A stretch of DNA of 64,000 nt from the NCBI RefSeq assembly GCF_006345805.1, contig NC_043009.1:71424001-71488000 (forward strand), in the 5' to 3' direction. Positions 3,309-59,218 of this stretch are shown here, piece after piece. Numbering within the stretch: the first letter of the stretch is position 1; each line of letters begins with the position of its first letter. The position numbers were made by a program, and so were the translations under genes. The notes beneath the pieces are model-generated. The model was not told the DNA's origin and did not search any database. It saw only the letters and a program-made list of their open reading frames with translations. The stretch is from Octopus sinensis (Eukaryota).

Positions 3309-3650
3309 CTTTTTATCTCAGGTTTTGTTGTAACTTGTGGAGTCTTGCATGCGCAGCGGGCCTGTTACCTGCAGCCTACGGTACCATGCTACCTGCCCTT
3401 ATACTTTCCTGATTATCCTGAACGTGCCAAGGAGGCAAAACTCTTGTAACAGTTCCTCTGGGCACTCTATTCCAATTTCGTTTATATTCCTCTTGATGCC
3501 TTCTGCCACTGTTCCCAAGGACCCAACAATTATTGGCACTATCTTCGTCTTCATTTTCCATAGCCGGGCTATTTTGTACTTAAGAGTGTTGTCTCTAACT
3601 ATCTTTTCTATGTTCGATGTGCAGGGGTATATATATGGGGGTATGTTTGT
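3309..3650 (-). mobile_element. Dong/R4-clade (restriction-like endonuclease) non-LTR retrotransposon 3' relic
   Basis: KYKIARLWKMKTKIVPIIVGSLGTV..LQEFCLLGTFRIIRKV is the typical R4/Dong C-terminus; its 3' end abuts a (TAA)n tract, the known Dong target. Confidence 0.75.
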
Positions 3651-4573: not shown

Positions 4574-7500
4574 CGTGTGCGTGTGTGTGTGTGCGCGCGC
4601 GAGTGTGTGCGTGCGTGCGCTGAATTCGTGATTGAGTCCTTTTCAGTTTTGAATGAATTCTGAAGAGGTGGTCATCATCACTGATTAGTTCTCGGCAAAT
4701 AAGTTTGTTTCTACTTCCAATGTTGATTTGTAACAGTGATACAGGGTTACAAACGATTGAATGGACCCTGGAATGATGAAAAACAAAGCTGGCCTCAGCC
4801 TGGTTTGAAATCAGAACTGCAAATCTCTAGGGTTTTACCTTTGTTGCATTGTCTTTTCAATCATTCAAACCAAACATTAAAAGCAGCAATCTACAAAACT
4901 GAGGAGACCCCTGGAAATAATAAGGACTGGCCTTCCACCAACTAAATTGAAACAAAATTTTCATTTTAGTTTTGCTAAAATACCTGTCATATACTGAGGT
5001 TGAGTCAACTAATTTCTTAGGGAATCAGTATTCATCTAAATCTGATCCAATGGAATAACTCGGTTTCTCGAGACGTCTCCGTGTCAGAGTGTTCCAAGCT
5101 GATCAGGACGAGTCAGTCGGTAGAGACCATTTGTGGCATAACTATACATGGATTCCCAGGGAATAAATCTGAAATGAGGAGGGCCACAATGTCACCTCCT
5201 GCGACCGTCGATCCTCTTTTCGACACTGTCCGTATTCTCCATCCATGAGGAGACGCAACATCCCTTAGTGAACTCTCCAGAGTTGGACACTACTTTCTTC
5301 CATTTCTTCTCCATTCCAAAAAAACTCCCATTTTCCTATTTTAGCTTTTTTTTTAATGTTAAAATTAGGCAAAAGATTAGCAACTTCGAACATTAGATGA
5401 TATGTTTTGTTAATTAATTTTAGCAGAACCGTTTAAGATACCTTGTGGTATTTGTTCCCGCCCTCTGCACTGTAACTTCAAATCCCTCTCAGATCAGTTT
5501 TGTCTTTCGTCTTTTCAGGGTCAATAAATAATGCCACAATCAAACTCTGGGATCCAGTCTCCCTTTGGATTCTACTCGCAATTTAAAGGTTTCACTTTGT
5601 CGCGACGATCTCTTGATCTCAGAATCGCGTTAAAGACGCAGATGACTATGGAATACTCAGCCGCAAGCGTTAATTTCACGAGTAAGAATTTAGCTGGTTA
5701 AACAACAGGTCATTGTACAGACCAACGAAGAATATACCAATTCTGTTTAGGTTCGCAATTAAAATCTTTATTTTCATCCTTTTATGGATTAAAACAAATC
5801 ATCGTCCAAGAGTTCGAATTGCCTTCACCGACAATTGCCAAACCTCGGGCTGTGATCTTGCTTCTGCACATTAAACCAATATTGTTACCAGCAAAGAAGC
5901 TTCTACTTGCTAGAAACTGTAGCCAAATCTCCACCAAACCACACCTTTCCGTCTTTAAAAAAGAGGGCGGGGATACATTGGATAATGTGCTTCTTAATGC
6001 AGAAAGAAACGAGTTGGTCATGGCTAGAATGTCATTTGATCATAGGTCTGGTTATCATTGTTTTGTATCAACAAGATACGCCCCCCCCCTCGAGAGCGCA
6101 TGCGACTGTATTAAAATGTAAATTTTATTTTCTTTTGGTGCTAAGGAGACCAGGATCCAAGGAAACTGGTCGATCTCTTTGGGGTTAAATTTGTCGAATC
6201 TTTTTTCCTTGAATGTAAATATTTTTTTAAATACCAAGACTCAGAGCGTCACGAATAGAGAACAACTACAAAAAAGGATTTTCCGTTTTCCTCTCACTAC
6301 TCCCATTGTGAAGCGCACATGTAGCCAAAATACAGCAACAATGTTCCACATAAAAAACAAGAAGCAGCCGGCTAAGTACCACCACAGCAACCCGTGACAA
6401 TAACAGCAACAACGAAATCCTGTCTCACCAAAACAACCTTTACCATAGTAACGTATTCCCGTAAGCGTGACAACGCCGTTGCTGCCAGCAACCGCCAACT
6501 CGAAAACGGTCTAACAATAACCAACAGCACCACAACTGCCAAAGAGACATCACCACCGATGGCATTAACAGGAACAACACCACAAACCATAAAAAGGTAT
6601 CGTTAGAGAGTTAAGCCAACAGAATTTTTCGCGAACACAGCTCAGAATCACAGAAAGACTTGAGCCGCAGAATTTACGAACAAAAATCAATCCTCAAAAA
6701 AACAGAAAAAAACTGAAAGAAGCAATGTTCTCAGAGGTACCAAGTTAACGTTGGTGAATAAAAGATTTACTGTAGCTTTGGCGTTTTGAATCAGAGTATT
6801 GAAACGTTAACCCAAGGATAGGCACAAAGGAGTCTGGAGTCCGTGGGGAAAGAATAAACAATTTCGTTACAAAACACAATCGATTTGGTTTAATTACTGT
6901 CAGATTCGGATCTGAATTCAAAGCGAGAAAACATTTGATGAGTTTGTCCTTGTCTCATCAGATATGAGCAAGTGAATTTGAAGGAAAAGGTGGTGGGTGT
7001 GCTACCAGAATTCAATATCTGGTGGCAGTTGTCTTCTATGATGAAGATGAGACATCCCAGAGGTTCACAGGGGTACCAAGAAAACTGGTCAAGTATGGGT
7101 ATGCAGCTTATCAATCCAGATTGACCAAGAGCTCAAAGCCATTCCTGATGTAATCAATGAGACAGGTGGAAATAGCACCAGTCTCACAGTGTCAGTACAC
7201 AAAGGTATCGCGTTTGAGGCTCAACCAAACATCGAAGATTTTCTGCCCACAGAAGAGGGCATTTGAAAGAAGACCCACAATATTATCAACACCACAGTCT
7301 AATTAAAAAGATGACACCTAGAAAAATTATCTCCATAAGAAGGGTGAGAAAGAGAGAAAATGGCAAAACCAATCTGTCCTCACAAAAGTCTGGGAAGTTT
7401 GATGGCCGTGAGCTCTGCCATTCCTTCTCTGAGGTTCTTCCAATAATAGGGGAACCTCTGCATGGTTGCACGTTCTGCAAGAAACAGTTAACAAGAAGCC

Positions 7501-9955: not shown

Positions 9956-10531
9956 TTTATTGCCATCAGGATGACAGATGTTCAAATTTGGAAAAAAAAA
10001 CAAAAGCAAAAAAAAACTAATTCTGCTTTAGAAAAATAAAACTGGATTGATTTTTGTTAGAAAATATAGAAAGTAGAATTATCACCTGTTGGAATTAATT
10101 GGCAAAGGTAGTGATGGTCATCATAACAGTTGTGGTGGGAGACAGGAATCAGGGGACAAAGACAGACAGGTGAGGGTCAAACAAGGAAAAAAGAAATAAG
10201 GAAAACATTATCAACAAATATGATAGTGGCTATTAATTTTTTTGGTTTTCTTTTTTACAATTAAATTTTTTAATAGACCACTATTTTTTATTTTTATTTT
10301 TTTTTTATATTTTGGAAATGATATTTTTTATGAATTCAAACAGGAGACAACAAAATGTAGACGAAAAAAAAAAAACTGTTTTCAATGTGCAAATCCTGTA
10401 AAAGCTTCATTAGAAAAATACAGAATGCGTGCTTGATTTGTTTTTCCCCCACTTTTCACAGCAGCCTGATTTGAAAGAAGTAGCCAACACTAGCATACCT
10501 AGCAAACCCTGTTTCGGAGGTTTTCTTCTGC
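9956..10531 (-). other. Probable 3' UTR of the TUSC3/MAGT1 gene with candidate AATAAA signals at about 10287-10298 and 9956-9961
   Basis: Follows the TAA stop; AATAAA hexamers on the minus strand. The true end cannot be determined from sequence alone. Confidence 0.4.
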
Positions 10532-10547
10532 TTACTTGAACAGGAAA
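10532..10547 (-). CDS. TUSC3: TUSC3/MAGT1 terminal coding exon: (S)FLFK-stop
   Basis: Acceptor tttttccgctgtctttttcAG followed by T TTC CTG TTC AAG TAA; gives YPYSFLFK*, like the YPYSFLIK/YPYSFLMS endings of the family. Short, so less certain. Confidence 0.8.
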
Positions 10548-10612
10548 CTGAAAAAGACAGCGGAAAAACAGATAATGCTTTGTACATCATTATTATTATT
10601 ATCCTCGTTACT

Positions 10613-11225
10613 AGAGCAGAGAGCTGGCAGAATCGTTAGCAGGTTGGGCGAAACGCTTAGCAGTCTTTTGTCTGCAGCTACATTCTGAATTCAAATTCCG
10701 CCAAGGTTGACGTTGCAGTTCATTCTTTCAGGCTCGATAAATTAAGTACCAGTTGAACACTGGGGTCAATACAGTTCTTTATTTAAGAGATGAGGAATTA
10801 TTTACATTATTTACAATTCACAGATATTTGTCCTCATCTTGTTTGTTGTTAACACAACGTTTTGGCTGATAGACCCTCCAGCCTTCATCAGAATATGCCA
10901 CAGGCATATGGCGTAGTGGTTAAGAGTGTGGGATACTAACCCCAAGATTCTGAGTTCGATTCCAGGCAGTGACCTGAATAATAATAATAATAATAATAAT
11001 AACATTGAAAAATACCTTAGGAATGAGAACCCAGGTTTGAAATTTCCCCAAGACACCTGATGAAGGCTGGAGGGTATATCAGCCGAAACATGTTAACAAC
11101 AAACAGGATGAGGACAAATATCCGTCAAACGTAAGTAATGTACTGGGGTCAATGTAATTAATTTATCCCCTCCCCCAAAATTGCTGCCCTTGAGGCAAAA
11201 TTTGAAACCATTATTATTATTATTA
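10613..11225 (+). mobile_element. Family-A SINE split by the hammerhead-bearing insert
   Basis: Head and core at 10613-10770; tail resumes at 11142 (actggggtcaatgtaatt..gaaacc attatt). Confidence 0.85.
10771..11141. mobile_element. Penelope-like/retrozyme-like non-autonomous insert: inverted arms with minimal hammerhead motifs, central tRNA-like Pol III head and (AAT)n
   Basis: 12-bp direct repeat actggggtcaat at 10759-10770 and 11142-11153; inverted arms about 10803-10891 and 11057-11142; gacac-CTGATGA-a-ggctg..cagcc-GAAAC at 11052-11089; A box tggcgtagtgg and B box gagttcgattcc at about 10909-10963. Confidence 0.75.
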
Positions 11226-16762: not shown

Positions 16763-16853
16763 CTATAAGGATAACCATGATACTTGGAACGGAAAATGGA
16801 TAGCAATAAACTGAAAAAGAAGGCCACACAGCCTACTCCTACCAATGCCATAA
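16763..16853 (-). CDS. TUSC3: TUSC3/MAGT1 exon 9: (I)[29 protein letters not shown](S)
   Basis: 91 nt, phase 1 to 2; acceptor ctcttctatttttcAG, donor GTACGT; conserved [12 protein letters not shown] motif. Confidence 0.97.
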
Positions 16854-17932: not shown

Positions 17933-18762
17933 CTGGCTTTAAAGATGAAAGAACAATTCTGAACTGTCATCTGCAGAATAAATAATATATGGAACTTAAG
18001 ACTAATTAATGTGTGTGTGCACGCATCTACAGAAAATTAAGTGCCTTGCTCAAGAACACAACACCTAGACTGAGCAATAGGTTGCATCCTCTAGCAAGGG
18101 GCTGCAAGTCCAGTCTGCTCAGCTAGAAATGAGTCCCAGTCCAAGAGATCTCTCTCTCTCTCTCTTCTTCTTCTTCTTCCAGTTGTTACATCCTCCTCCA
18201 CGTTAAAGCTCAGTGGGCAAAAGCATGGTCCATGCCACGGGCCATATTTGCTATAGAGTGACAGCTATGGCTTTTGGTCATACACACACAACTCATTGAT
18301 TGATTGATTGAATGTCATATGATGAAACACCAGTGTTCTGGATGCCCTGCCCCACCATCCATGCCTTTAAAAACCCACAATTTTCTTTGAGATGTTTCCC
18401 TGAGACAAACTATTATAGTTTATACTATTCCATGTTTGTATACAAAGCATGTTACAGACTCCAACAATTTAATCAGAACCGGTTGAATAAACAAAAAACA
18501 TTTTAATGTTTGTCTAAATAAATATTTCTAACATTAATACAAGACCATAAATGATAAACTTAGGTGAGCTTTGTGGCCAGAGTTGGTACTGAGCTGGACT
18601 CAATACTCTGCTGGTAATGTTTCCTTAACTCCAGAGAAGATTAAAGAGGTAAAGACAACCTTGGAAGGATTTGAACATCAAAGAATGTCATCACACAATT
18701 CACCACCTGTTGATTGATCTGAAGAAATATTTAAAAGAAAAAAAAACTAAGATTTTACTTAC

Positions 18763-18837
18763 TTTTTTTCTTGCCTGGATCACCTTTTAAATTATTAGCT
18801 TCATTAAGTAGAATGAAACCTATCACAACAGCAGCAT
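18763..18837 (-). CDS. TUSC3: TUSC3/MAGT1 exon 8: (N/Y)AAVVIGFILLNEANNLKGDPGKKK(I)
   Basis: 75 nt, phase 1 to 1; acceptor CCCTTAAC-ttcgtctcAG (U12 branch site, no long pyrimidine tract), donor GTAAGT; matches [24 protein letters not shown]. Confidence 0.95.
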
Positions 18838-18847
18838 CTGAGACGAA

Positions 18848-18855
18848 GTTAAGGG
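18848..18855 (-). promoter_or_regulatory. U12-type branch site CCCTTAAC upstream of exon 8
   Basis: CCTTAAC core, 10 nt (ttcgtctcAG) from the 3' splice site, the spacing typical of U12 introns. Confidence 0.9.
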
Positions 18856-23242: not shown

Positions 23243-23503
23243 TTGCAATGACAGAGACATTCCTTTACAACTCTCAATGTCAAGGAAACAGTAACACACA
23301 CACACACACACACATCCAATGGGTTTCTTCCGATTTCTCTCTACCAAATCCACTTGCAAGGTTTGGCCAGCCCAAGGTTATAGAAGAAGGCGCTTTTCCA
23401 AGGTGTCCAGCTGTGGGATTGAACCCAGAACAATGTGGTCAGGAAACAAGAGGCAAGAGTTTCATGCACTGACACTTCGTAAGTGACTTCTGCTGATTAC
23501 TAA

Positions 23504-24915: not shown

Positions 24916-25529
24916 GATAGAAATTATTGAAATAATTCTTCACACACAGTAATTCTTCAGATTGACAGGGAACATAAACAGGGACCTTAAAACTAGGCCA
25001 TTCTCCAAATAATGATTATGCAACCAATTTCCCAGCAGTCGATCAGCAGCTACCATTTTTAATTATGTGAGGACACTTAAATTTCCAGTGATCATCATCA
25101 ATGACTTTTTTGCTATCAAACCATCACAACACACAAGCACCTGTTGAGTATCGGGGTCAATGGGATCAAATAGACCCTTCCTGAACCAAAAAAGCCTTGT
25201 GCCTATAATAGAAAGGGTTTTAATGATTATTATTTCTAGTAATGGTTAAGGAGGCAAAAATTCAATTTATTAACATGTAAAAGAATCAGTAAAAAGTATT
25301 TGTTCTAACCAATGAAGAATTTCTTGAATGAAATATTTCAGCAATTTTAAAATCTTGAACAATTTTGAAATTGGGTAAAAATTTTTAGCAGCTGGACACA
25401 GGAATACAGCGGAAACCGTTAGTTTTCACATAATAAAGAAATTCATTTTACTATTGCAACAGATGTAGAATCTTTTAGGTGGTGCCATAATTAGGCTTAC
25501 TCCTGTTTCAACATTTATAGCCATTATTG

Positions 25530-26769: not shown

Positions 26770-27335
26770 TTACATCAAGCCAGAACTTTGTGCGTATTTT
26801 ATTTTACCAATCCCAGAAGGGTGAAAAGCAAAGTTCAAATCTTTGACAAGATTTGAACTCAGAATATTGAAACTAATACCTCAAGACACTTTGTAATACT
26901 TCCGCCAATCCACTGTCCTAAGCCAATAATAATCTTCTCTCCTAAGCCTGACACTTTGGAGGAGAGGGCTAAGTCAATTACATCAACCCCACACCTCAAA
27001 TGGTATTGGTTTTATATCGACCCTGAAAGGCTGAAAGGGCAGTCAACCTTGGCAGAATTTGAACTCAGAACAGAAGAGGCAGAAGAAATGCCACTGAGTG
27101 TCTGACGTGCTAACATTTCTGCCACCTTCAATAAAATGTTTCTAAAATAGGAACAAGGCCTAAAATAGGGGGGGGGTGATTACATCAACCACATCACTTA
27201 ATTAAGTTCTTTATTTTATCAACCCCAGACAGGTGAAAGGTGAAAGATGACTTCAGTATCATTTGAACTCACAATGTAAAGAGTCACAACAAATGCCATG
27301 TGGTATTTTTTCCAGCACTTTAATGATTCTGCTAA
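26770..27335 (-). mobile_element. Three tandem older family-A SINE copies
   Basis: Three recurrences of gaaaggc(t)gaaagg..gatttgaactcag about 200 bp apart. Confidence 0.75.
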
Positions 27336-27546
27336 TCCAAATTAATAATTACAACAACAACAACAATAATGAGAAAAAATGAAGGAAAGAGTTGAAGATG
27401 TGAAGAAGAATGAACCTTGTTGGAAAGATTTAAACATAAAAGAGAATGGAAACTCGAAAGGAAGAAATGAAATTTTGATAATGAAACAAAATGGGGGGAC
27501 AGGGGGGATGGAAACAAACAAACAAACAAAAATGTAAGAGCAACCG

Positions 27547-27555
27547 AAAAGATAC
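27547..27555 (-). promoter_or_regulatory. U12-type 5' splice site GTATCTTTT of exon 7B
   Basis: GTATC core with C-to-T at +6, a tolerated U12 variant; homologous position to the 7A donor. Confidence 0.8.
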
Positions 27556-27619
27556 AGTTAAAAAATATAATATAGGACTCTGCAACAAACTGCAGTTCAA
27601 ATGATGGAACGATGAACTG
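27556..27619 (-). CDS. TUSC3: TUSC3/MAGT1 exon 7B, putative mutually exclusive paralog of 7A: QFIVPSFELQFVAESYIIFFN(Y)
   Basis: Exactly 64 nt, same phases, open frame; acceptor atttcttttatttttcAG, donor GTATCTTTT. Aligns without gaps to 7A (7/21 identical: I,S,Q,F,V,E,Y; QFVAESY core); T+AT gives Tyr with exon 8. Not in the ORF track; transcript support is unknown. Confidence 0.85.
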
Positions 27620-30600
27620 CTGAAAAATAAAAGAAATTCAACAGAAGGTTCAAAATATACAAAAAAATATCAAGATATGACAAAGCAATAACTAACATGT
27701 GCCAAACAGAAGGTTAAGAGACATGCGAGGGGGGGGGTTCTTTGTCTCTCTCTTCTCCACACCATTTTTTTGTATATGGGAATAACAATCATTAGCAGAA
27801 AGCCAGATGCAAATAAAATATGAGAAAGAATATAAAGTGAAACCAAGCAAAAATGGGGTGAAAAAGATTGCAATATATGTCAATGCTGAGATGAAAAAAA
27901 AGGAAAAAGAAGAGCAGCATAACCAGTGAGAAGAAGAAGAAGAAGAAGAAGGAGAGAAAAAGAGCAAACGAGCTAAACTGGAATCAATTATGAAAACAAT
28001 CAAGCAAAGAAGAAATTTTTTTTTGTCTCTTTCCTAATAATCTATTGTTGATAGAGAATGGACAAAGGATTCCTAAATCAAAGCAGATTTCAGGAACATA
28101 GAATTATAAAAACAGAAAGAAAAATATTGTTTTTCTTCCCTTTTTTCTTTTTTTTTTTTTTAAAGAAATATTTCCACAAAATGTCTCTGACTGTAGATAA
28201 TTTCTTAAATTAGACAATAAAGATTTTAGCTGAAACGGTAGAAAGAACAATAAAAAGAATGGGGAAAATTATGAAAGAAAAAAAACAAAAAAAAAACGAA
28301 GGAAATCAGTCAAGTGTGGAAATGAGTGAGTTGGAAGAAAGACTAACAGATTTCATACTCTATGAACAAATTAGAATTAAGTTAACGAAGATATAAAAAT
28401 AAGAAAAGGAAAACAATCAAAAATCCAGGTGAGTCAATATGTTGGTCAGGACAAAAAAAAAGTCTTTGCAGGAAGTAAAAACAGTTTTCAGTGTAAATAA
28501 GAGCAGATAGCAAACTAGTTTTCAATTAAATACATTCAGCTATTTAATTAGGAGTTAAGAACCATTCCACATGATCAAAAGATAATGCATGCTAATTCTA
28601 CAGAAGTAAAACATGCAGCTCTACCCAATAAATTCAGTTTATAAAAGAAAATGTAGAAAGACTGGTGCTATGGATACCAATGCTATGTGATGCCTGAGTT
28701 TTTTCAATTATTTGAACATTTAATAACTTATCTTCAATTTTCATGCCAAACAAGGGAGAAAATTTCAAAGCTCTGGAGCAGATAACAAAAGCTGTTATAA
28801 TCTCTCAAAAAATTAACTCTCAGACTAACCTGAAAAATTGAATGCTGTTGGAATATAATTTGCTTGCAACAATAAGCCACATTTTTTTAAATGTCATTTG
28901 ATTCAAAATTCATGAGAGATGAGATAATGAAGGAGACGACGACGTTAACAGGCAAATGACCATCAAATCCATTTCGTGGTAAAAGATGATAAAATTCTGC
29001 TACACAGGAAGGGCTTTTGCTTACAGCTTATGTCAACTAAAAGAAGGAACAATCAAAAGAAACAAAGGGGCTGCTGCTGAGAGCAAGAATCGTCATCATC
29101 ATCAATGGCTGCTTAGGAGAGAATTGCTACTGCAAGTGGTGGAGATATCTATTTATATAATCAGACCGTCCGTCCGTCAGATAAGCAGACATATGTCTTT
29201 AGACAAACAAAATCACACAAGAATGGCTTCAACCAGGGTCGACTCTGGAAATTACTGGAAAAAATAACAGGCCTCATAAGTGGTAAAAACTAGGCATTGG
29301 TGAGAGGAAGCAGAAACACACACACACACACACACACACACCCACAGCAGCTGACTTTATGGGTAGTGATGGCCATGATGCTAATAATACTCAGTCTTTC
29401 CTGTTCCAGAAACACAAAAGAAACAAAAAATCAATACTAGTAGGCAAAACAAAATAATCAATCAATTCTTTTTCACCAGAATTCTTTGTATTATTTTTTT
29501 AGAAGAAAAAAGGCAATTTAGCAAAATAGCTTTGAAACGAAGTTGGGGTGGGGGTGGAAGTGGGTAAAACATAAAAGGTTTAATTAACTCAAACAGTTAT
29601 GTTGAAAATTAAATTTAAGAAAGAAACTTTAGCAATTACATTTGAATATTCTTTTTACTACATCAAAAATAATTTCATGTTTTTAAAACCTTACAAATAT
29701 AATGTTATTAATACAATTAAACTCTTTTTATTTTAACATTAGCAACAAACAAACGAAAACAAGCATTTTTTTTCTCTCTCCTAAGCTTGGAACTTTTACT
29801 TTGGTTAAGTAGAGACGTTATGTCCATTCACAAAGAACATAAGCATTTTGAATGAAACGTGGAACAACTTAGAAACCAAAACTGGTTCACTGACTCATCT
29901 CAGAATCTTACAGATTCTGAGATGTTATATTGATAGGGTTTTCTTTCAGAGGTGTACACTACATTTACATTTAATTAAATATAGAAACAACAACAAAAAT
30001 GTTCTTGTTTGTTTTTTTTTTAATCAAAATTAGGATTTCCTTCAAAATTAAAATTAAAACCAAAGTAAAATTAAAGAAAATTTGTTGAATAATCTACAAG
30101 ACAATTTTTAAGAACCAAATCTCTAACTCAGTGAGATTTTACTTAAAATCTTTTGAGTACTAAACTAGACATAGCGAAACAGCTAATCCAGTGCTCAAGC
30201 ATGAGGGGCCCCTTTGGCTGATGCTGAGATAGAAATACTTAACAAAAAATAATATTCATGAGAGTCTCGTCTAGCATTGGCTAAAAGTTCGTTAATTTCA
30301 AGAGAACAGTTGATTATATAAACCTCAGTATTTGTCTGTGTACTACAAACCCAAGGAAAATTCATCTGAGCAGGACTTGAACTCAAAACTTTGGGGAACC
30401 ATAACTTTGTAGTCCAGAAGTTCATTTTGTAAGCATGCAGTGTTGGGTTCAGTCCCACAGTGCAGAACCTAAGGCGAGTGTCTTGGGAAACAAAAAGCTG
30501 CATTCAGCTCATCGTGAGTGCATGCGTGCATGCAAATGTGCATGTATGTTGATACTGCACTTGTCACCATTTCAGTGAAACAGCGATAATGTTGACATTC

Positions 30601-32024: not shown

Positions 32025-32033
32025 AAAGGATAC
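32025..32033 (-). promoter_or_regulatory. U12-type (minor spliceosome) 5' splice site GTATCCTTT of exon 7A
   Basis: Exact match to the established U12 GT-AG donor consensus RTATCCTTT at the exon boundary. Confidence 0.9.
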
Positions 32034-32097
32034 TCAGGCACATAACTAAGTAAGTTTCCACTACAAACTGGCCCTGACTGCTACCATGGATATAATG
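32034..32097 (-). CDS. TUSC3: TUSC3/MAGT1 exon 7A (canonical-type): HYIHGSSQGQFVVETYLVMCL(N)
   Basis: 64 nt, phase 0 to 1; acceptor gtttttgcattgcAG, donor GTATCCTTT (U12 consensus). Matches SYIHGSSQAQFVAE of human TUSC3/MAGT1; A+AT gives Asn with exon 8. Confidence 0.95.
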
Positions 32098-33369: not shown

Positions 33370-34570
33370 ACAATGACATCCAGTTTAGTGGTTGGTGTAA
33401 CTTTCAATTCCAAAGTTGGGTGCCAGACCTTCCAGGATCTTCCATATAAAATATCACTGCATATCTTTTACATCTTCTCTCTCAGGAGTCTCAGAGTCTC
33501 AGTCCTTCCGACCTCTCCCACCAGTTCATCTGTTGCACCAAGTCAATCTTCTTTTTGCAGAGGCACTAAATTGCCTCAAGTTCTGCTGTTAGTTTAACAC
33601 TTTGTAATGATCACAGCTGGAAGCAGTAAACGCAGGCAACTGAAAACAAATGCTCTACTCCGGAGTAGCTTCATGTCCTTTTCATGTTGTTTTATTCCAG
33701 TTGCTTTCATCAGCCAACTTGCATACTGCCTTCAGATCTTTCTCCAGTTTTCAGATGTCATCAGCACCCTTTAAACCCTAGCAACACATTTGTATCATCA
33801 GCACAACAGGTGACAGTGGCTGACTGTACAACTGACGGTATGCCCGAGAGAACCACCACAAAGTGAGGGACTCCACTGAGAACTGATGTCTCCTCACAGA
33901 CAATACCATTGGCTGCAACTGTAGCACTTCTACAACGTTTACTTTTTGAAAAGGAATGCAGCCACTCTTGTAGCTTTTTGGCTGATGCCAAAGTCACACA
34001 GTTTGTGACATCATCCCATGATCAATTCTATGGGAAGGCCTCGGCAATATCAGGAAAATATCACATCTACATTTGAGTGGTTGGGCTGTGGTTTCAGTGC
34101 TCAGTCATAACACTGTAGTTGTTGTGTGAGGTCGCTCGATCCTGCTCAGAAGACTTCCTGCATTTTGGGGAGCAAGATATTTATTTTCCAGGAACAGGAT
34201 CAACCTCCCCCTCCTCCTCCTTCTGATAATGGATTCCATATTCTTGCTAAGATGTGAGATCAGAAATGTTTAGCATCTGCTCTGCTCCCTCCTTTACGGA
34301 CAGGGCATCTTATACCTTCTTTTAACATTTTAGGAAGTTTGCCACATGCAAGGAAACTCTGGAAAAGTATCCGTAGTGGGTTTGTGAAAACTTTCTCGCA
34401 TGTCTATAAAAGAATAACTAAAAACCCACCTGGGCCCACTGCTGAATTTGATTCCATCTCAACTTTTACATCCAATGTAATTGATAATTGCCTTTTTTCT
34501 GTGGACTTCTGCCACCAAGCTTGTTTTGCTCCTGTTTATTGTCTTTCGGCCAAGTGAGAACACTTTTGCT
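33370..34570 (-). mobile_element. Old CR1-like LINE RT relic
   Basis: WLHSFSKSKRCRSATVAANG..ETSVLSGVP..TCCADDTNV resembles CR1 RT motifs (SGVPQG, YADD); heavily disrupted; boundaries approximate. Confidence 0.75.
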
Positions 34571-41630: not shown

Positions 41631-41970
41631 TCACGTCTTCCCACTTGTTTCAGTCACTGGACTGCAGATCATGCTGCAGCATGGCCTTGAGGAACTTTTA
41701 GGCGAACCAATCAACTTCAGCACTTGCTTTTTGTCTTTTTTTAAGACGGGTACTTACTCTATTGGTCACTTTTGCAGAACCACTAAGTTGTAGGGACGTA
41801 AGCACAGCCAACACCAGTTGTCAAGCAGTGGTGAGGGACAAACACACACACACACGATGGGATTTTTCAGTTTCCATTTACCAAATCCACTCACAAGGCT
41901 TTGACAGCCCAAGGTGCCATGCAGTGGGACTGAACCGGGAACCATATGGTTTTATCACACAGCCATACCT
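41631..41970 (-). mobile_element. Family-B SINE (further partial copies near 35580-35730, 36050-36150, 42090-42220, 61270-61340)
   Basis: cttgtttcagtcactggactgc..ccaaatccactcacaaggc..ggactgaaccgggaacc..cacacagcca. Confidence 0.8.
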
Positions 41971-44702
41971 AGACAATTTACGCAACAAATACATCTCTTA
42001 ACAATTTGTTTCTGGAAACCATTTTTGTGGATCCATACACCTGGGTATGACTGAATATTTTCAAATGAACATACACTTTACATACGTAACAGGCTTCTTT
42101 CAGTTTCCATCTCCCAAAGCCATGGGCTACAGAAGAACACATTTGGCCAAAGCAGACTGCAGCAGGACTGAACCCCAAAGCCAAACAGTTGGAATGCAAG
42201 TCACTTGACCACATGTCCAACGGCCAGAGTGCAACGAGGCTGGAACAAGGAAAGGAAGTCATACAAAAACACAAACACACATTCATATGCCCATTTGTGT
42301 GTGTGTATAGAGCTGTAGCTATGAATGGACAGGTGGAGAGGGAGAGGTAGATATGGAAAGACAGAGTGAGAGAGAGAGAGAGAGAGAGAGAGTGATAAAG
42401 AGACAGAGTGATAGAGAGACAGAGTGATAGAGAGACGAATAGAGATATATAAAAAGACAGACAGAGTGATAAGGAGACAGAGGGACAGACACATATCTGT
42501 ATTAGAGTCCTTTGTTCTAGTTTATAACTAAATGCAAAAAGGTGAAGGTCAGTCATAACTAGGGCAGACAAAGTTGGGAGGAAATGGGAGAGCAATATTG
42601 TTGTTATTATTATTATTATTATTATTATCATTAAAACTAGAAGCAAGAGTTATTAAAAAAACGTTACTATAGTAACTCCCAAGTCACAAAACTAATGTCA
42701 TTTTGTAAACTCGTTGGCTGGAAAATTAAATATCCCATTTAATGTCTTTTATTTACAGACCACCCCCTCTCTCTCAATCTATATATATAGATATATATAG
42801 ATATATATATATATATATAGATATTATAAAGAGAGTTTGTGTTTGTGCGTGTGTGTATGTTCCTTAAGCATTCAAAATGTGAGTTGCTGATTTTGACGTA
42901 TGGAGGAGTATCAAGAGATTCAGTAATCTTTCGGCAACCAAATAAACTGTTTTTGGCACAACAACTCTTGTTTATTACTAAAATAACCTCTGAAACAAAG
43001 TCAGGTCACACAATTTTGAGATCATTTTCAGGCAATATTTCGATTTGCTTCTATGTTTCACTTTCGTCCGATGCTTAATGCATGAATAGAATTCTACTCA
43101 GACAAACATTTATGAAAATGTATCCATAAATATGGTATCAAAATAAGCCACAACCAAAAAAGTTTCATTAAAAGACATCCATTATTCTATATGTCATAAA
43201 GAAATACACTCTCTCTCTCACTCACATGCACACAAAAAAAATGTATGCACATGTATTTTTGTACGTGTATATGAAAGATAATGTGTTAGAGAGAGAGAGA
43301 GAGAGTGAGTGAGTGCCATTTACATGCAAAAAAATACACAACAACACACATCTTCACTCACTTACTCTCTCTCTCTCTCACATACACACATCCATACATC
43401 CTTCACTTTCTGCTCTCACTTCAAAGCAAATGTTGTCTTTTCATTTTCTCTTCTCTTTCAATTTCTGCTTTCTTCAAAGGATAAAGAAATAAAATTTTTT
43501 TCTGGAAATTAACGAACAATCATGATCCCATATGATTGAGTTTACAACGTTGCTGCTTCAAATGAAAGAATGCCATAAAATAACTTCCTTTCTCACACAC
43601 ACACACACACACTAGATAAAACTTCTGTGCAAATTATGATATTTCTTGTCGTGTGCATGTGCAAAATTACAGCTCAAATCCAATTGAAATGACATTTTTC
43701 TATTCCGTAATTTGTTTGTGATGAGCATATTTGAAAACCTGATCTTCAGTATAAACTTAAAAGGAAATTTCCCAGAAATCCTGTCCTTTACCTGCTGTTT
43801 CTAGCATGTTCAAGGTGACATTTGCACTCCACCCCTTAGGTTTTTCCTTAATTTCTTTCAATTCCTATGTTTTCAATACAGGAGATTAGGATTTCACCCA
43901 AAAACCACGTTCTCAATTTTTTAATTTTCTCCCTCCCCACCCCAATTTTTTCATTTGTTTTACTTTTTTCCAAATATTTTTCTTGGTAATCCACAGAGAA
44001 AACAACAGAGAGTAGAAACTTTATGAATTTTCTTTTTTTCTTAAAGAAACACTAAAATTTCCTTCCCAACCATCCACCCATCACCTCCCAATGTTTCACT
44101 TTTAGCTTTCTGGAAAGCATGGAGGTTTCATCAGAAATAATATCATTTACCTGTTGTTTCTAGCATGTTGGGTTTTCTGATAGTGGTCTGGTATTTTTTA
44201 CGTCTGCTATTTCAGTAAAATTCTATGCATGAAAGATCAAATGAAAGTGAAACATTGGGATGTTTTAGCTTTTTGAAAGTGGGTAGGTGATGGGTGAGCA
44301 AGGTGAGGGAGGGGGCATTGAGGTTTCCTCAAGAAAAATTAAACAAAAATACAATATATATTTCCCAGATTCGTAATCTCTATTTTTCTACGTGGACAAA
44401 ACAAAAACAAAATTCGTAAAAATGTTACAAATTAAGAATATTTGTGGTTGGGTCAGGGGCAAATTAAAATTTTAAAAATGTGATTTCTGGGTAAAATCAT
44501 ATTAACGCCTTTTATACGATGAAACAAAATATAATTTGTGATCCTTCTTAAGAACAGAGAGCATTTTCATGCAAATTGTAACCCTCCCCACTGCCCCACT
44601 TCACTTCCATTCTGCCAGTAGGCCAGTTCCCTCTATATCAGCTGTGCCGATTCTGCCCAAAAGAAAGGAACAAATAATACAATGTGGCTGGAGGTCATGA
44701 CA

Positions 44703-45621: not shown

Positions 45622-47805
45622 TCATCATCATCATCATCATCATTTAGCGTCCGTTTTCCATGCTAGCATGGGTTGGACGGTTCTACTGGGGTCTGTGAAG
45701 CCAGAAGGCTTCATCAGGCCCAGTCAAATCTGGCAGTGTTTCTACGGCTGGATGCCCTTCCTAACACCAACCACTCCGTGAGTGTAGTGGGTGCTTTTTA
45801 CGTGCCACCCGCACTGGTGCCAGACAGAGCTGGCAAACGGCCACGAACGGATGGTGCTTTTTATGTGCCACCGGCACGAGGGCCAGGCGAGGCTGGCAAC
45901 GGACACGAAACGGGGCGGTGCTGGCAACGGTCGCGAAACGGAAAGTTCTCTTACATGCCACCGGCACTGGTAACACATCTGCAATTTCCATTGATCGATT
46001 TCCATTGATCGATTTCGATTCTGATCCTCACTTGCCTCAATGGGTCTTCACAAGCAGAGTTTCGACATGCCACCGGCACTGGTAGCACATCCGCAATTTC
46101 CATTGATCGATTTCGATTCTGATCCTCACTTGCCTCAACACGTCTTCACAAGTAGAGTTTTGTGTCCCAAGAAGGGAAGGTATGCATACGTAGGCTGGCT
46201 CCATCCCATGTAGAAGGCCACGGGTTGTGGACTCACTTGTCCTGCCGGGTCTTCTCGCGCACAGCACACTTCCAGAGGTCTCGGTCTCTAGTCATTTCCT
46301 CAGTGAGACCTAAAGTTCGAAGGTCGTGCTTCACCACCTCGTCCCAGGTTTTCCTGGGTCTGCCTCTTCCACAGGTTCCCTCAACCGCTAGGGTGTGGCA
46401 CTTTTTCACACAACTATCTTCATCCATTCTCGCCACATGACCATACCAGCGCAAACGTCTCTCTTGCACACCACAACTGATGCTTCTTAGGTCCAGCTTT
46501 TCTCTCAAGGTACTTACACTCTGCCGAGTGTGAGTACCGGCATTACACATCCATCGGAGCATACTGGCTTCATTTCTAGCGAGCTTACGCATATCCTCAG
46601 CAGTCACGGCCCATGTTTCACTGCCATGTAGCATGGCTGTTCGTACACACGCATCATACAGTCTGCCTTTCACTCTGTGCGAGAGGCCTTTTGTCACCAG
46701 CAGAGGTAAGAGCTCTCTGAACTTTGCCCAAGCTATTCTTACTCTAGCAGTTACACTTTCAGCACACCCACCCCCGCTGCTGACTTGGTCACCTAGGTAA
46801 CGGAAACTATCAACTATTTCTAGTTTTTCTCCCTGGAAAGTGACGGAAGTTGGTCTCAGAGCATTTTCAGTGTTTATTGTTCCTGAGCATCTGCCACATA
46901 CAAAAACCATCTTCCTAGTTAGCCTTCCTTTGACATTGCTGCATCTCTTATGTGTCCATAGCTTACACTTGGTGCATCTTATAGAGTTTCTACCTACACC
47001 TTTTCTACAGATCGAGCAGGGCCATCTACCTGAAGGTGTTTGTGATTTGTCTACCTTCCTACTGATTACGACTTTGGTTTTAGCTAGATTGACTCTGAGG
47101 CCCTTCGATTCTAATCCTTGTTTCCACACCTGAAACTTCTCCTCCAGTTCTGATAGCGACTCAGCAATTAGAGCAAGGTCATCAGCATAGAGGAGCTCCC
47201 AAGGGCATCCTGTCTTGAATTCCTCCGTTATTGCCTGGAGGACTATGATAAATAGGAGGGGGCTGAGTACTGAGCCTTGGTGGACCCCTACCTCTACCCG
47301 GAATTCTTCACTGTACTCATTTCCAACCCTCACCCTACTAGCGGCGTCCCTATACATGGCCCGCACAGCTCTCACTAACCATTCATCTATCCCTAGTTTT
47401 CTCATTGCCCACCAGATAAGGGATCGGGGGACCCTGTCGAAGGCTTTCTCCATGTCAACAAAAGCCAGGTACAGGGGCTTATCTTTGGCTAGGTATTTCT
47501 CCTGCAGCTGCCTTACCAGGAATATAGCATCAGTAGTACTTTTCCCTGGCACAAACCCAAACTGCATCTCATCTAAACTAACTCTCTCTCTAATTAGTTG
47601 GGCTATGACCCTCTCCGTAACCTTCATCACCTGGTCCAACAGCTTGATACCGCTGTAGTTATTTGTATCTAGGGCATCACCTTTACCTTTGTAGCAGTTG
47701 ACTATTATACTGCTACACCAGTCATTGGGTATGACCCCTTTGTGTATCACCTGATTAACTATATGGGTGACTAGGCTATAGCCGACACTACCAGACATTT
47801 TGAGC
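45622..47805 (-). mobile_element. Young 5'-truncated RTE-clade LINE: open 521-aa RT ORF (46233-47798), 3' UTR and (TGA)n tail
   Basis: RT motifs LAFVDMEKAFDRVP, GVHQGSVLSPLLF, LLYADDL, FRYLG, and RTE-type RRLRWYGHVARM..GRGRPRKTW; no endonuclease domain; tail ..ggacgctaaatgatgatgatg. Confidence 0.95.
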
Positions 47806-49937: not shown

Positions 49938-50027
49938 CATTTGGCCTGTGTGTGGATTTCTATGCATGAATGGAGGTCCTCGGATATGATTCCACATCTG
50001 ACCTGATGTCATTGCAAATATAATGAT
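49938..50027 (-). CDS. TUSC3: TUSC3/MAGT1 exon 6: [30 protein letters not shown]
   Basis: 90 nt; acceptor ttcttctcctcAG, donor GTAAGA; invariant [12 protein letters not shown] motif of OST3/OST6 proteins. Confidence 0.97.
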
Positions 50028-52613: not shown

Positions 52614-52754
52614 CATAGCTCCAAATCCCCATGATGTTTTGTTGTACAAAAAGTCTAAGTTATTTCTTTTTAAATATAGCAGACCACCAACCAGAGAGAA
52701 AAGTAATGCAACAGCCAAGGTTCCAGAGTAATTGGGTGGACGGAATACTCGAAT
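52614..52754 (-). CDS. TUSC3: TUSC3/MAGT1 exon 5: [47 protein letters not shown]
   Basis: 141 nt; long polypyrimidine tract + AG, donor GTAAGT; phase 0 to 0. Hallmark IRVFRPPNY and first TM helix; visible inside ORF-track 52581..52823. Confidence 0.97.
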
Positions 52755-56240: not shown

Positions 56241-56298
56241 CTGAATATCCGTTCTCTCACCAACCCATCTTGCAATTAATTCTGCAGCAAATCCAACT
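56241..56298 (-). CDS. TUSC3: TUSC3/MAGT1 exon 4b: (R)VGFAAELIARWVGERTDIQ
   Basis: 58 nt; acceptor tttcctttattccAG, donor GTAACT. CG+A joins to Arg in frame with exon 4a; matches GFAAEQLAKWIADRTDV. Confidence 0.95.
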
Positions 56299-59135: not shown

Positions 59136-59218
59136 CGATGTATATCCATTGTATCTCCTTTCCTTGGCTTCCCTTTTGGTGGAAAATGCATGAAGACAGG
59201 AGCTGTGTTGATTTTTAA
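59136..59218 (-). CDS. TUSC3: TUSC3/MAGT1 (OST3/OST6 family) coding exon 4a, thioredoxin-like domain end: [27 protein letters not shown](R)
   Basis: 83 nt; acceptor tttttttgtAG, donor GTATTA; phase 0 to 2. Translation matches human TUSC3 [28 protein letters not shown] as recalled. Upstream exons were not found in the window. Confidence 0.95.

What the first reader, a model, noticed from the sequence alone, without database searches (positions are those of the whole stretch)
27556..27619. Exon 7B rewrites the conserved HGSSQ loop and the start of the next TM helix of an OST subunit
Seen: the family-conserved IHGSSQGQF becomes IVPSFELQF, and the helix LVMCLNAAVV becomes IIFFNYAAVV. Established: MAGT1/TUSC3 (yeast Ost3/Ost6) dock on the catalytic STT3(B) subunit through their C-terminal TM helices, and vertebrates and yeast diversify this subunit by gene duplication. 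Inference: this animal may make two OST oxidoreductase variants by splicing from one gene, altering STT3 binding or glycosylation-site selectivity in a tissue-specific way.
Basis: inference. Interest (0 to 1): 0.7.

Follow-up and report, generated by a model that had tools for sequence, protein, structure and literature searches.

The report
Alternative exon in octopus OST subunit
Octopuses make two versions of one subunit (TUSC3/MAGT1) of the enzyme that attaches sugars to proteins by choosing between two copies of exon 7. The second copy is real, conserved and already in public gene annotations, and the either/or choice is probably enforced by a rare "minor spliceosome" splice site, as in a few other genes.

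Summary
Window 27619..27556 (minus strand) is a 64-nt exon with an AG acceptor and a GT donor, the same length and phase as canonical exon 7 (32097..32034). It replaces HYIHGSSQGQFVVETYLVMCL-N with QFIVPSFELQFVAESYIIFFN-Y in an octopus TUSC3/MAGT1 (OST3/6) gene.

It is not new as a sequence. The 7B isoform is annotated as XP_029643993.1 (O. sinensis X2), CAI9732340.1 (O. vulgaris) and XP_014768238.1 (O. bimaculoides X2).

It is functional by conservation. In Argonauta hians the only unique conserved blocks between exons 6 and 9 are exons, 7B among them: 4 synonymous codon changes and 2 conservative replacements.

Mechanism, inferred from sequence: both copies carry a U2-type acceptor and a U12-type donor (GTATCCTTT, GTATCTTTT). 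Exon 8 has a U12 branch site (CCCTTAAC, 10 nt before the acceptor AG). So 7A cannot be spliced to 7B, and including both or neither shifts the frame. This is the JNK (MAPK8-10) and TMEM87B arrangement.

Similar extra exon-7 copies, sharing proline at position 5 and Asp/Glu at position 8, occur in Owenia (annelid), Lingula (brachiopod) and several unidentified spiralian contigs. They are absent from five other spiralian genomes. What the swap does to the OST complex is untested.

The parts
59136..59218 (-). Exon 3 of the TUSC3/MAGT1-like gene ([13 protein letters not shown]). It is the first exon inside the window; exons 1-2 lie beyond position 64000.
   Evidence: no N-terminal exons found in the window
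56241..56298 (-). Exon 4 (VGFAAELIARWVGERTDIQ)
52614..52754 (-). Exon 5 ([15 protein letters not shown]; TM1 and the start of TM2)
49938..50027 (-). Exon 6 ([30 protein letters not shown]), single copy in the window, followed by a U2-type donor GTAAGA
32034..32097 (-). Exon 7A, canonical, 64 nt (HYIHGSSQGQFVVETYLVMCL + 1 nt); acceptor ttgcattgcag
   Evidence: 92.5% identical block in Argonauta with 5 synonymous and 0 replacement changes
32025..32033 (-). U12-type 5' splice site of exon 7A, GTATCCTTT (perfect match to the consensus)
   Evidence: GTATCC donors at this exon in all ten other genomic loci examined
27556..27619 (-). Exon 7B, the finding: alternative 64-nt copy (QFIVPSFELQFVAESYIIFFN + 1 nt); U2-type acceptor with pyrimidine tract ttcttttatttttcag
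   Evidence: annotated isoforms; Argonauta orthologue
27547..27555 (-). 5' splice site of exon 7B, GTATCTTTT (U12-type with C>T at +6). The 10-nt string GTATCTTTTC is identical in Argonauta and in the alternative exons of L003 and L031.
27512..27643 (-). Block conserved between Octopus and Argonauta around 7B (83.7% over 135 aligned columns). It extends 24 nt upstream and 44 nt downstream of the exon. The downstream U/G-rich stretch is a candidate intronic splicing regulator.
18848..18855 (-). U12-type branch-site motif CCCTTAAC, ending 10 nt before the AG of the exon 8 acceptor
   Evidence: TCCTTAAC or CCTTRAC at the same place in the other loci
18763..18837 (-). Exon 8 (AAVVIGFILLNEANNLKGDPGKKK), the common acceptor for 7A and 7B
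16763..16853 (-). Exon 9 ([29 protein letters not shown]; TM4)
10532..10547 (-). Coding part of the last exon (..S FLFK stop)

Best explanation
Exon 7B is a genuine, selectively maintained, mutually exclusive alternative to exon 7A of the single octopus TUSC3/MAGT1 (OST3/6) gene. The window comes from Octopus vulgaris or O. sinensis.

**Origin (inferred).** It arose by tandem duplication of exon 7.

**Splice signals (shown).** Each copy keeps a U2-type 3' splice site and a U12-type 5' splice site. Exon 6 has a U2-type donor. Exon 8 has a U12-type branch site and acceptor.

**Splicing logic (inferred from those signals).**
- The major spliceosome joins exon 6 to either 7A or 7B.
- The minor spliceosome joins whichever copy was chosen to exon 8.
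- The 4.4-kb 7A-7B interval has a U12 donor and a U2 acceptor, so neither spliceosome can remove it.
- Transcripts with both copies or neither are frameshifted and presumably degraded.
- The weaker donor of 7B (GTATCT) and its conserved flanks probably make 7B the regulated, minor choice.

**Protein effect (shown).** The swap rewrites residues 259-280: the end of the luminal TM2-TM3 loop and the first half of TM3. It keeps S264, Q268, F269 and E272. It replaces the otherwise (nearly) invariant Y260, H262 and S265.

**Function (inferred).** The swap yields a second flavour of the OST3/6 subunit with altered contacts in the STT3-OST4-OST3/6 subcomplex or at its luminal face.
For: **Exon anatomy and reading frame:**

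**Annotated isoforms carrying exactly this exon:** XP_029643993.1, CAI9732340.1, XP_014768238.1 and XP_036364429.1. In the O. vulgaris annotation, alternative forms were added by PASA from Iso-Seq and RNA-seq assemblies.

**Conservation against Argonauta hians.**
- Over about 33 kb, the only unique collinear conserved blocks are exon 6, 7A, 7B, exon 8 and exon 9.
- 7B has 4 synonymous codon changes and 2 conservative replacements (I>L, I>V). 7A has 5 synonymous changes and none replacing.
- The donor string GTATCTTTTC is conserved.

**U12 signals.**
- GTATCYTTT occurs only at the two exon-7 ends in the whole window.
- The CCCTTAAC motif ends 10 nt before the AG of the exon 8 acceptor.
- The same donor and branch-site signals are present in ten other spiralian loci.
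- Human MAGT1 and TUSC3 are listed as minor-intron genes (PMC7507305).

**Frame.** Including both exons or neither gives premature stops.

**Published precedent.** The spliceosome-incompatibility model and examples with the same layout: PMC4165533, PMC6071210, PMC6865273, and Mapk9 and Tmem87b in PMC6717393.

**Residue conservation.** Among 45 metazoan homologues, S131, Q134 and E138 of the fragment are invariant, and Y126, H128, S130, F135 and T139 are nearly so.

**Family assignment.** Match to human MAGT1 in OST-B, PDB 6S7T chain H, E = 1e-140.
Against: - No RNA-seq junction counts or tissue data could be reached. Expression rests on annotation pipelines and on conservation.
- Dependence on the minor spliceosome is read from sequence motifs only.
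- The 7B donor has a mismatch at +6, and the octopus branch site is CCCTTAAC rather than TCCTTAAC.
- Frameshift plus NMD could enforce exclusivity without any spliceosome incompatibility.
- The AlphaFold models of both isoforms are low confidence (pLDDT 58-60). They show only that both keep the same helix pattern.
- Nothing here measures OST assembly or activity.
Confidence: 0.75

Rival explanations
1. 7B is real and mutually exclusive, but the exclusivity is enforced mainly by the reading frame plus NMD, or by trans-acting regulators or RNA structure, and not by U2/U12 spliceosome incompatibility.
For: - Each copy is 64 nt (not a multiple of 3), and including both or neither creates early stop codons.
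- 24 nt upstream and 44 nt downstream of 7B are conserved in Argonauta, as expected for regulator binding sites.
- The 7B donor departs from the U12 consensus at +6.
Against: - The 7A donor is a perfect U12 site, and the 7B acceptor has a long pyrimidine tract and no close U12 branch motif. The hybrid intron therefore exists whatever else acts on it.
- No conserved intronic blocks that could serve as docking or selector sites exist between exons 6 and 8.
- The 7B flanks show no above-background pairing with the other conserved blocks (|z| < 1.6).
- These mechanisms are not exclusive of the main explanation.
Confidence: 0.2
2. 7B arose by a cephalopod-specific duplication. Its resemblance to the alternative exon-7 copies of annelids and brachiopods is convergent, meaning recurrent duplication of the same exon.
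For: - Patchy distribution. A single exon 7 is found in Haliotis, Mizuhopecten, Liolophura, Tubulanus and Lamellibrachia. All other molluscs sampled therefore lack it.
- In Lingula the extra copy lies upstream of the canonical exon, not downstream.
- Copy number varies from 2 to 3.
- Twenty-one residues are too few for a reliable tree.
Against: - Octopus 7B is closer to the alternative exon of L003 (12/21) than to its own 7A (7/21).
- All nine alternative copies have Asp or Glu at position 8, and eight of nine have Pro at position 5. Canonical copies have Q and G there.
- Octopus, L003 and Owenia share AESYI.
- Octopus, Argonauta, L003 and L031 share the 10-nt donor GTATCTTTTC. Owenia and L002_b also have GTATCT, against GTATCC at nearly all canonical copies.
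Confidence: 0.45
3. 7B is a decaying or non-functional duplicate whose annotated isoform is splicing noise.
For: - No direct expression data were seen here.
- It replaces residues that are invariant or nearly so in 45 homologues.
- It has a weaker donor.
Against: - The open frame, splice sites and amino-acid sequence are preserved between Octopus and Argonauta, while the surrounding intron is unalignable.
- It is annotated independently by NCBI Gnomon in two species and by a PASA/Iso-Seq pipeline in a third.
- Analogous exons are kept in other phyla.
Confidence: 0.04

Closest known systems
JNK genes MAPK8/9/10, mutually exclusive exon pair next to a U12-type intron (Mapk9 exons 7/7a in PMC6717393; model of Letunic 2002 and Chang 2007 as cited in PMC6865273)
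   Same: - Tandem duplicated exons of equal length.
- A major-type intron upstream and a minor (U12) intron downstream, with the second copy embedded in the annotated minor intron.
- A hybrid U12-donor/U2-acceptor interval between the copies, so they cannot be joined to each other.
   Different: - A different gene family (an ER membrane OST subunit, not a kinase).
- The exon length is not a multiple of 3, so the frame adds a second safeguard.
- Relatives in other spiralians carry three such copies. One review describes the model as limited to pairs (PMC6071210).
- No regulator comparable to Nova2 is known here.
TMEM87B exons 11/11a (PMC6717393)
   Same: A mutually exclusive equal-length exon pair around a minor intron, with one isoform tissue-enriched.
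   Different: Unrelated protein. Tissue usage of the octopus exon is unknown.
Vertebrate MAGT1/TUSC3 and yeast Ost3/Ost6 paralogue pairs
   Same: Two alternative, mutually exclusive versions of the same OST subunit (the oxidoreductase subunit of subcomplex II, with STT3 and OST4).
   Different: - Diversity there comes from gene duplication and affects the whole protein.
- Both vertebrate paralogues keep YIHGSSQAQF.
- In octopus only 14 of 22 residues change, and the conserved loop itself is replaced.
Conserved U12-type intron of human MAGT1 and TUSC3 (minor-intron-containing genes, PMC7507305)
   Same: The intron after exon 7 carries minor-class signals in every animal locus examined. Oyster X2 isoforms look like retention of this intron.
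   Different: No alternative exon inside the minor intron was found for the cnidarian-type or deuterostome-type loci sampled.

Membership tests
OST3/OST6 family (Pfam PF04756; MAGT1/TUSC3) | Significant match to the family profile and to solved members | tested here: met
   - PF04756 is precomputed for the octopus protein P0110 and for all hits.
- Human MAGT1 in OST-B (6S7T chain H), E = 1.1e-140 over residues 10-338.
- TUSC3 thioredoxin domain (4M8G), E = 5e-72.
- Yeast Ost3 and Ost6 are also matched.
OST3/OST6 family (Pfam PF04756; MAGT1/TUSC3) | N-terminal luminal thioredoxin-like domain with a CXXC motif, followed by four TM helices | tested here: met
   - CTVC is present in the full-length annotated protein, encoded outside the window.
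- The fragment encoded in the window is predicted with four long helices in both isoforms, although the models are low confidence.
Mutually exclusive exons from tandem exon duplication | Adjacent exons of the same length and phase, with sequence homology, used one at a time | tested here: met
   - Both are 64 nt, starting in phase 0 and ending in phase 1, and lie 4.4 kb apart in the same intron interval.
- They share 7/21 identical residues plus conservative changes, with a shared QFV.E.Y core.
- Annotated isoforms contain one or the other, never both.
- Including both or neither gives premature stops.
U12-type (minor) intron | 5' splice site /RTATCCTT | tested here: met
   - 7A has GTATCCTTT, a perfect match.
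- 7B has GTATCTTTT, with one mismatch at +6. By my own reasoning a G-U wobble with U11 is possible there.
- These are the only two GTATCYTTT sites in the window.
- The consensus itself is taken from established knowledge, not from a tool.
U12-type (minor) intron | Branch-site motif TCCTTAAC about 10-15 nt upstream of the 3' splice site, without a strong pyrimidine tract | tested here: met
   - Octopus: CCCTTAAC, ending 10 nt before the AG of the exon 8 acceptor.
- TCCTTAAC in Argonauta, Lingula, L001 and L002.
- CCTTRAC or ACTTAAC variants in the others.
U12-type (minor) intron | Removal depends on U11/U12/U4atac/U6atac snRNPs | not testable with these tools
   This needs knock-down or minigene experiments.
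MXE by U2/U12 spliceosome incompatibility (JNK type) | The interval between the two exons has a U12-type donor and a U2-type acceptor. The upstream intron is U2-type and the downstream intron is U12-type. | tested here: met
   - Exon 6 donor is GTAAGA.
- The 7B acceptor is ttcttttatttttcag with no close match to TCCTTAAC.
- The 7A donor is GTATCCTTT.
- Exon 8 has the U12 branch site.
MXE by U2/U12 spliceosome incompatibility (JNK type) | Absence of 7A-7B spliced transcripts, and loss of exclusivity when splice-site class is changed | not testable with these tools

The most novel reading that the evidence does not exclude
Octopus 7B may be the cephalopod survivor of an ancient spiralian alternative exon class.

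**The class.** The consensus is x-[FY]-I-[YVH]-P-x-x-[DE]-x-Q-[FL]. The donor is usually the weakened U12 site GTATCT.

**Age and fate.** It would have existed already before molluscs, annelids and brachiopods split, and was then lost repeatedly.

**Meaning if true.** The ancestral spiralian made two (in some lineages three) OST3/6 variants from one gene, differing in the conserved luminal HGSSQ loop and the start of TM3. This would be a splicing counterpart of the Ost3/Ost6 and MAGT1/TUSC3 duplications. Exclusivity in the arrays would come for free from the U12 donor that each duplicate inherits.
Probability: 0.4. Interest if true: 0.6.

Novelty: new member of a known kind. Interest (0 to 1): 0.4.

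Why it matters
**For OST biology.** Nature has run a mutagenesis experiment here. A 21-residue cassette removes the Y-x-H-x-S-S part of the most conserved luminal loop of MAGT1/TUSC3, keeps the Q-F-x-x-E core and the TM3 register, and has been maintained by selection. Comparing the two isoforms in assembly with STT3B/OST4 and in site-specific glycosylation would show what that loop does.

**For splicing.** It adds a clean, deeply conserved example of mutually exclusive exons built on a U2/U12 hybrid arrangement. Related loci with three copies show that the arrangement is not limited to exon pairs.

**For annotation.** The alternative exons seen in Owenia and Lingula do not appear in the single protein found for each species here.

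Tried and rejected
1. **Chance ORF.** Rejected by the structural scan, the annotation and Argonauta conservation.
2. **Further exon-7 or exon-6 copies in the octopus window.** None found with tblastn using all variant types, or with the structural scan.
3. **Docking/selector RNA structures.**
   - No conserved intronic blocks other than the 7B flanks.
   - Duplex energies of those flanks against the other conserved blocks are no better than shuffles.
4. **Independent transcript evidence in the protein collection.**
   - The first search, with a 107-aa query, returned only proteins of 188 aa or less, and none had a 7B-like segment.
   - The second search returned only canonical representatives, because isoforms are merged in 90% clusters.
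   - The isoforms appeared only on listing cluster members. No Logan-derived octopus transcripts were present.
5. **Taxa of L001-L003.** The run accessions are not in the paper library. Protein identity does not discriminate between spiralian phyla. L003 is too divergent to be a cephalopod.
6. **Squid, cuttlefish or Nautilus loci.** No such proteins were among the hits, so the age of 7B within cephalopods is open.
7. **AlphaFold2 of both partial isoforms.** Low confidence (pLDDT 60 and 58). Used only for helix boundaries and not taken to a fold search.
8. **A second CCTTAAC...YAG site at 25236-25251.** No exon follows it and it is not conserved in Argonauta, so it is chance.
9. **Literature on mutually exclusive exons in TUSC3/MAGT1 or in octopus.** Nothing relevant found.

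Full report
**What is at the coordinates.**
- The gene lies on the minus strand. Window 27619..27556 is a 64-nt open segment. It is preceded by ttcttttatttttcag and followed by gtatcttttc, and encodes QFIVPSFELQFVAESYIIFFN plus one base.
- About 4.4 kb upstream in the transcript, 32097..32034 is a second 64-nt segment. It is preceded by ttgcattgcag and followed by gtatcctttt, and encodes HYIHGSSQGQFVVETYLVMCL plus one base.
- Either segment joins exon 8 (18837..18763, AT GCT GCT GTT GTG...) in frame, giving ..CLNAAVV.. or ..FFNYAAVV...

**The gene.**
The exons are:

| Exon | Window coordinates (minus strand) |
|---|---|
| 3 | 59218-59136 |
| 4 | 56298-56241 |
| 5 | 52754-52614 |
| 6 | 50027-49938 |
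| 7A / 7B | 32097-32034 / 27619-27556 |
| 8 | 18837-18763 |
| 9 | 16853-16763 |
| 10 (coding part) | 10547-10532 |

- Exons 1-2 lie outside the window.
- The best database matches are Octopus vulgaris/O. sinensis and Argonauta hians "tumor suppressor candidate 3".
- The full octopus protein matches human MAGT1 of the OST-B cryo-EM structure (6S7T chain H) at E = 1e-140.
- CDSs assembled from the window coordinates reproduce residues 135-339 of XP_029643992.1 (7A) and XP_029643993.1 (7B) exactly. Exon 7 encodes residues 259-279.

**Already annotated.**
- Representatives clustered at 90% identity hid the isoforms. Listing cluster members revealed them.
- O. sinensis isoform X2 (XP_029643993.1), which is identical to O. 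vulgaris CAI9732340.1, carries exactly QFIVPSFELQFVAESYIIFFNY.
- O. bimaculoides X2 (XP_014768238.1) carries QLIVPSFELQF..., one residue different.
- O. sinensis X4 combines 7B with an alternative C-terminus.
- In the O. vulgaris annotation, alternative forms were added by PASA from Iso-Seq and RNA-seq assemblies. The 7B model therefore probably rests on transcripts. This is an inference; I could not see reads.
- No paper on mutually exclusive exons in TUSC3/MAGT1 or on this octopus gene turned up.

**More than chance, and under selection.**
- Sequence similarity between 7A and 7B is modest (7/21 identical), and the window-wide tblastn E-values are unimpressive.
- The structural pattern AG + 64-nt open frame + G[TC]ATC[CT] occurs only four times on both strands of the 64-kb window. 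Two of those hits are 7A and 7B.
- I fetched the Argonauta hians locus (L004). It has 7A at 34354-34417 and a 7B orthologue at 41963-42026 (QFIVPSFELQFVAESYLVFFN, same donor).
- A blastn of the 33-kb octopus interval from exon 6 to exon 9 against Argonauta finds only five unique collinear blocks: exon 6, 7A, 7B, exon 8 and exon 9. Everything else is repeats or unalignable.
- Codon by codon, 7A has 5 synonymous and no replacement changes. 7B has 4 synonymous codon changes and two conservative replacements, I>L and I>V.
- The 7B block (window 27643-27512) extends 24 nt upstream and 44 nt downstream of the exon, as is usual for regulated alternative exons.

**Splice-site classes and the likely mechanism.**
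- The 7A donor GTATCCTTT is a perfect U12-type 5' splice site. The 7B donor GTATCTTTT differs at +6 only. These are the only two GTATCYTTT sites in the window.
- Exon 8 is preceded by CCCTTAAC, ending 10 nt before the AG of its acceptor. That is a U12 branch-site motif at the canonical distance.
- Exon 6 has an ordinary GTAAGA donor, and both exon-7 copies have pyrimidine-rich U2-type acceptors.
- The consensus motifs themselves are established knowledge, not a tool result.
- The same signals (GTATCC donor; TCCTTAAC or CCTTRAC about 10-14 nt before exon 8) are present in every other locus examined.
- Many genome-derived ORFs from arthropods read through this donor as "..SIL..", which is A|GTATCCT.
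- Human MAGT1 and TUSC3 are listed among minor-intron genes (PMC7507305). Oyster "X2" isoforms look like retention of this intron.
- It follows (inference) that exon 6 is joined to 7A or 7B by the major spliceosome, and 7A or 7B to exon 8 by the minor one. The 7A-7B interval is a U12-donor/U2-acceptor hybrid that neither spliceosome can remove.
- This is the published "spliceosome incompatibility" model (PMC4165533; PMC6071210; PMC6865273). The layout is that of Mapk9 exons 7/7a and Tmem87b 11/11a (PMC6717393).
- A second safeguard is shown directly: including both copies or neither gives stop codons within a few codons.
- I found no sign of docking/selector RNA structures.

**What changes in the protein.**
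- By alignment to human MAGT1 and by the low-confidence AlphaFold2 models (pLDDT about 60), exon 7 covers the last residues of the luminal loop between TM2 and TM3 and roughly the first 13-14 residues of TM3. Both isoforms are predicted with the same helix pattern.
- Across 45 metazoan homologues, fragment positions Y126, H128, S130, S131, Q134, F135, E138 and T139 are invariant or nearly so.
- 7B keeps S130, Q134, F135 and E138. It changes Y>F, H>V, S131>F and T>S, introduces Pro and Glu in the loop, and moves the conserved Asn one position earlier.
- In yeast OST, three TM helices of Ost3 contact Stt3 TMH10/11/13, TMH2 lines the lipid-linked-oligosaccharide groove, and TMH3-4 face the translocon in docking models. 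MAGT1 binds STT3B specifically (PMC7226087).
- An effect on these contacts or on the luminal face is plausible but untested.
- Both vertebrate paralogues keep YIHGSSQAQF. The octopus swap is therefore more radical at this site than the MAGT1/TUSC3 divergence.

**Beyond octopus.** Extra 64-nt exon-7 copies with AG acceptors and GTATC-type donors occur elsewhere.

| Locus | Source | Extra exon-7 copies |
|---|---|---|
| L001 | unidentified spiralian contig | HPWSDNQF and YPDADGQF (three exon-7 copies in all; also two exon-6 copies) |
| L002 | unidentified spiralian contig | HGSRQGQF and HPWPDTQL (three copies in all) |
| L003 | unidentified spiralian contig | VFIYPSSDTQFVAESYIVILL, donor GTATCTTTTC |
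| L006 | Lingula anatina | GYIVTRSDGQF.., upstream of the canonical exon |
| L011 | Owenia fusiformis | HYIYPKGDMQLCAESYIIVGI |
| L017, L031, L067, L085 | metagenome contigs | one or two extra copies each |

- A single exon 7 is found in Lamellibrachia, Liolophura, Haliotis, Mizuhopecten and Tubulanus.
- A single exon 7 is also found in all nine cnidarian- or deuterostome-type metagenome loci that span exons 7-8.
- All nine alternative copies have Asp or Glu at position 8, where canonical copies have Q. Eight of nine have Pro at position 5, where canonical copies have G.
- Octopus 7B is closer to the L003 copy (12/21) than to its own 7A (7/21). It shares AESYI with L003 and Owenia.
- The donor GTATCT is shared with L003, L031, Owenia and L002_b. 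Nearly all canonical copies have GTATCC.
- These shared features point either to one ancient alternative exon lost many times, or to recurrent duplication under the same constraint. With 21 residues I cannot decide, and I rate the ancient-origin reading at about 0.4.

**Verdict.**
The proposed functional consequences and tissue specificity remain untested.
- The exon is already in public annotation, and the splicing architecture belongs to a known, rare kind. It is therefore a new member of a known kind, of moderate interest.
- The added value lies in the U12-based mechanism and in the cross-phylum exon class.

Noticed in passing
window 18754-18763 (minus strand), 3' end of exon 8: The exon 8 donor is a tandem GTAA|GTAA. 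Using the second GT, 4 nt downstream, shifts the frame of exon 9. This exactly explains the aberrant C-terminus (..[34 protein letters not shown]) of the annotated O. sinensis isoforms X3 and X4, which would lack TM4.
   Followed up: partly
L001 1498-1587 and 1650-1739: In this unidentified spiralian contig exon 6 is also tandemly duplicated: [30 protein letters not shown] and [30 protein letters not shown]. Both copies are 90 nt with AG and GT sites. This is a second candidate mutually exclusive cluster in the same gene. Octopus has one copy.
   Followed up: partly
L001 3210-3273 (same in L085 3337-3400): The third exon-7 copy (IFFYPDADGQFVVETYLVMMF) is followed by GCATCTTTCC instead of GTATC. 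It is either a GC variant of a U12-type donor or a copy that is losing its splice site.
   Followed up: no
L007 (Liolophura sinensis) 10266-10624: About five tandem, partly degenerate copies of the end of exon 9 (SVFRSKYQGYPYR) follow the real exon in the chiton locus.
   Followed up: no
P0247, P0249, P0250 (oyster TUSC3-like 'isoform X2' proteins): These annotated isoforms read through the exon-7 donor (..FFLSILTN..) and stop early. They correspond to retention of the U12-type intron.
   Followed up: partly
window 25236-25251 (minus strand): A perfect U12-like branch site plus acceptor (cTCCTTAACCATTACTAG) sits inside the 7B-exon 8 intron. No open exon follows and it is not conserved in Argonauta, so it is probably chance.
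   Followed up: yes
window 45622-45780, also 23321-23405 and 41879-41915: Interspersed repeat families shared with Argonauta. The first matches at least five places in the Argonauta TUSC3 locus. SINE-like units with a '..gaaaggc/gtgaaag..tttgaactcagaa..' core also recur around 26800-27300.
   Followed up: no
L006 (Lingula anatina) 3586-3649 and L011 (Owenia fusiformis) 5393-5456: These candidate alternative exon-7 copies are absent from the only protein found for each species, whose 90% cluster has a single member (sequences). They are possibly unannotated isoforms.
   Followed up: partly
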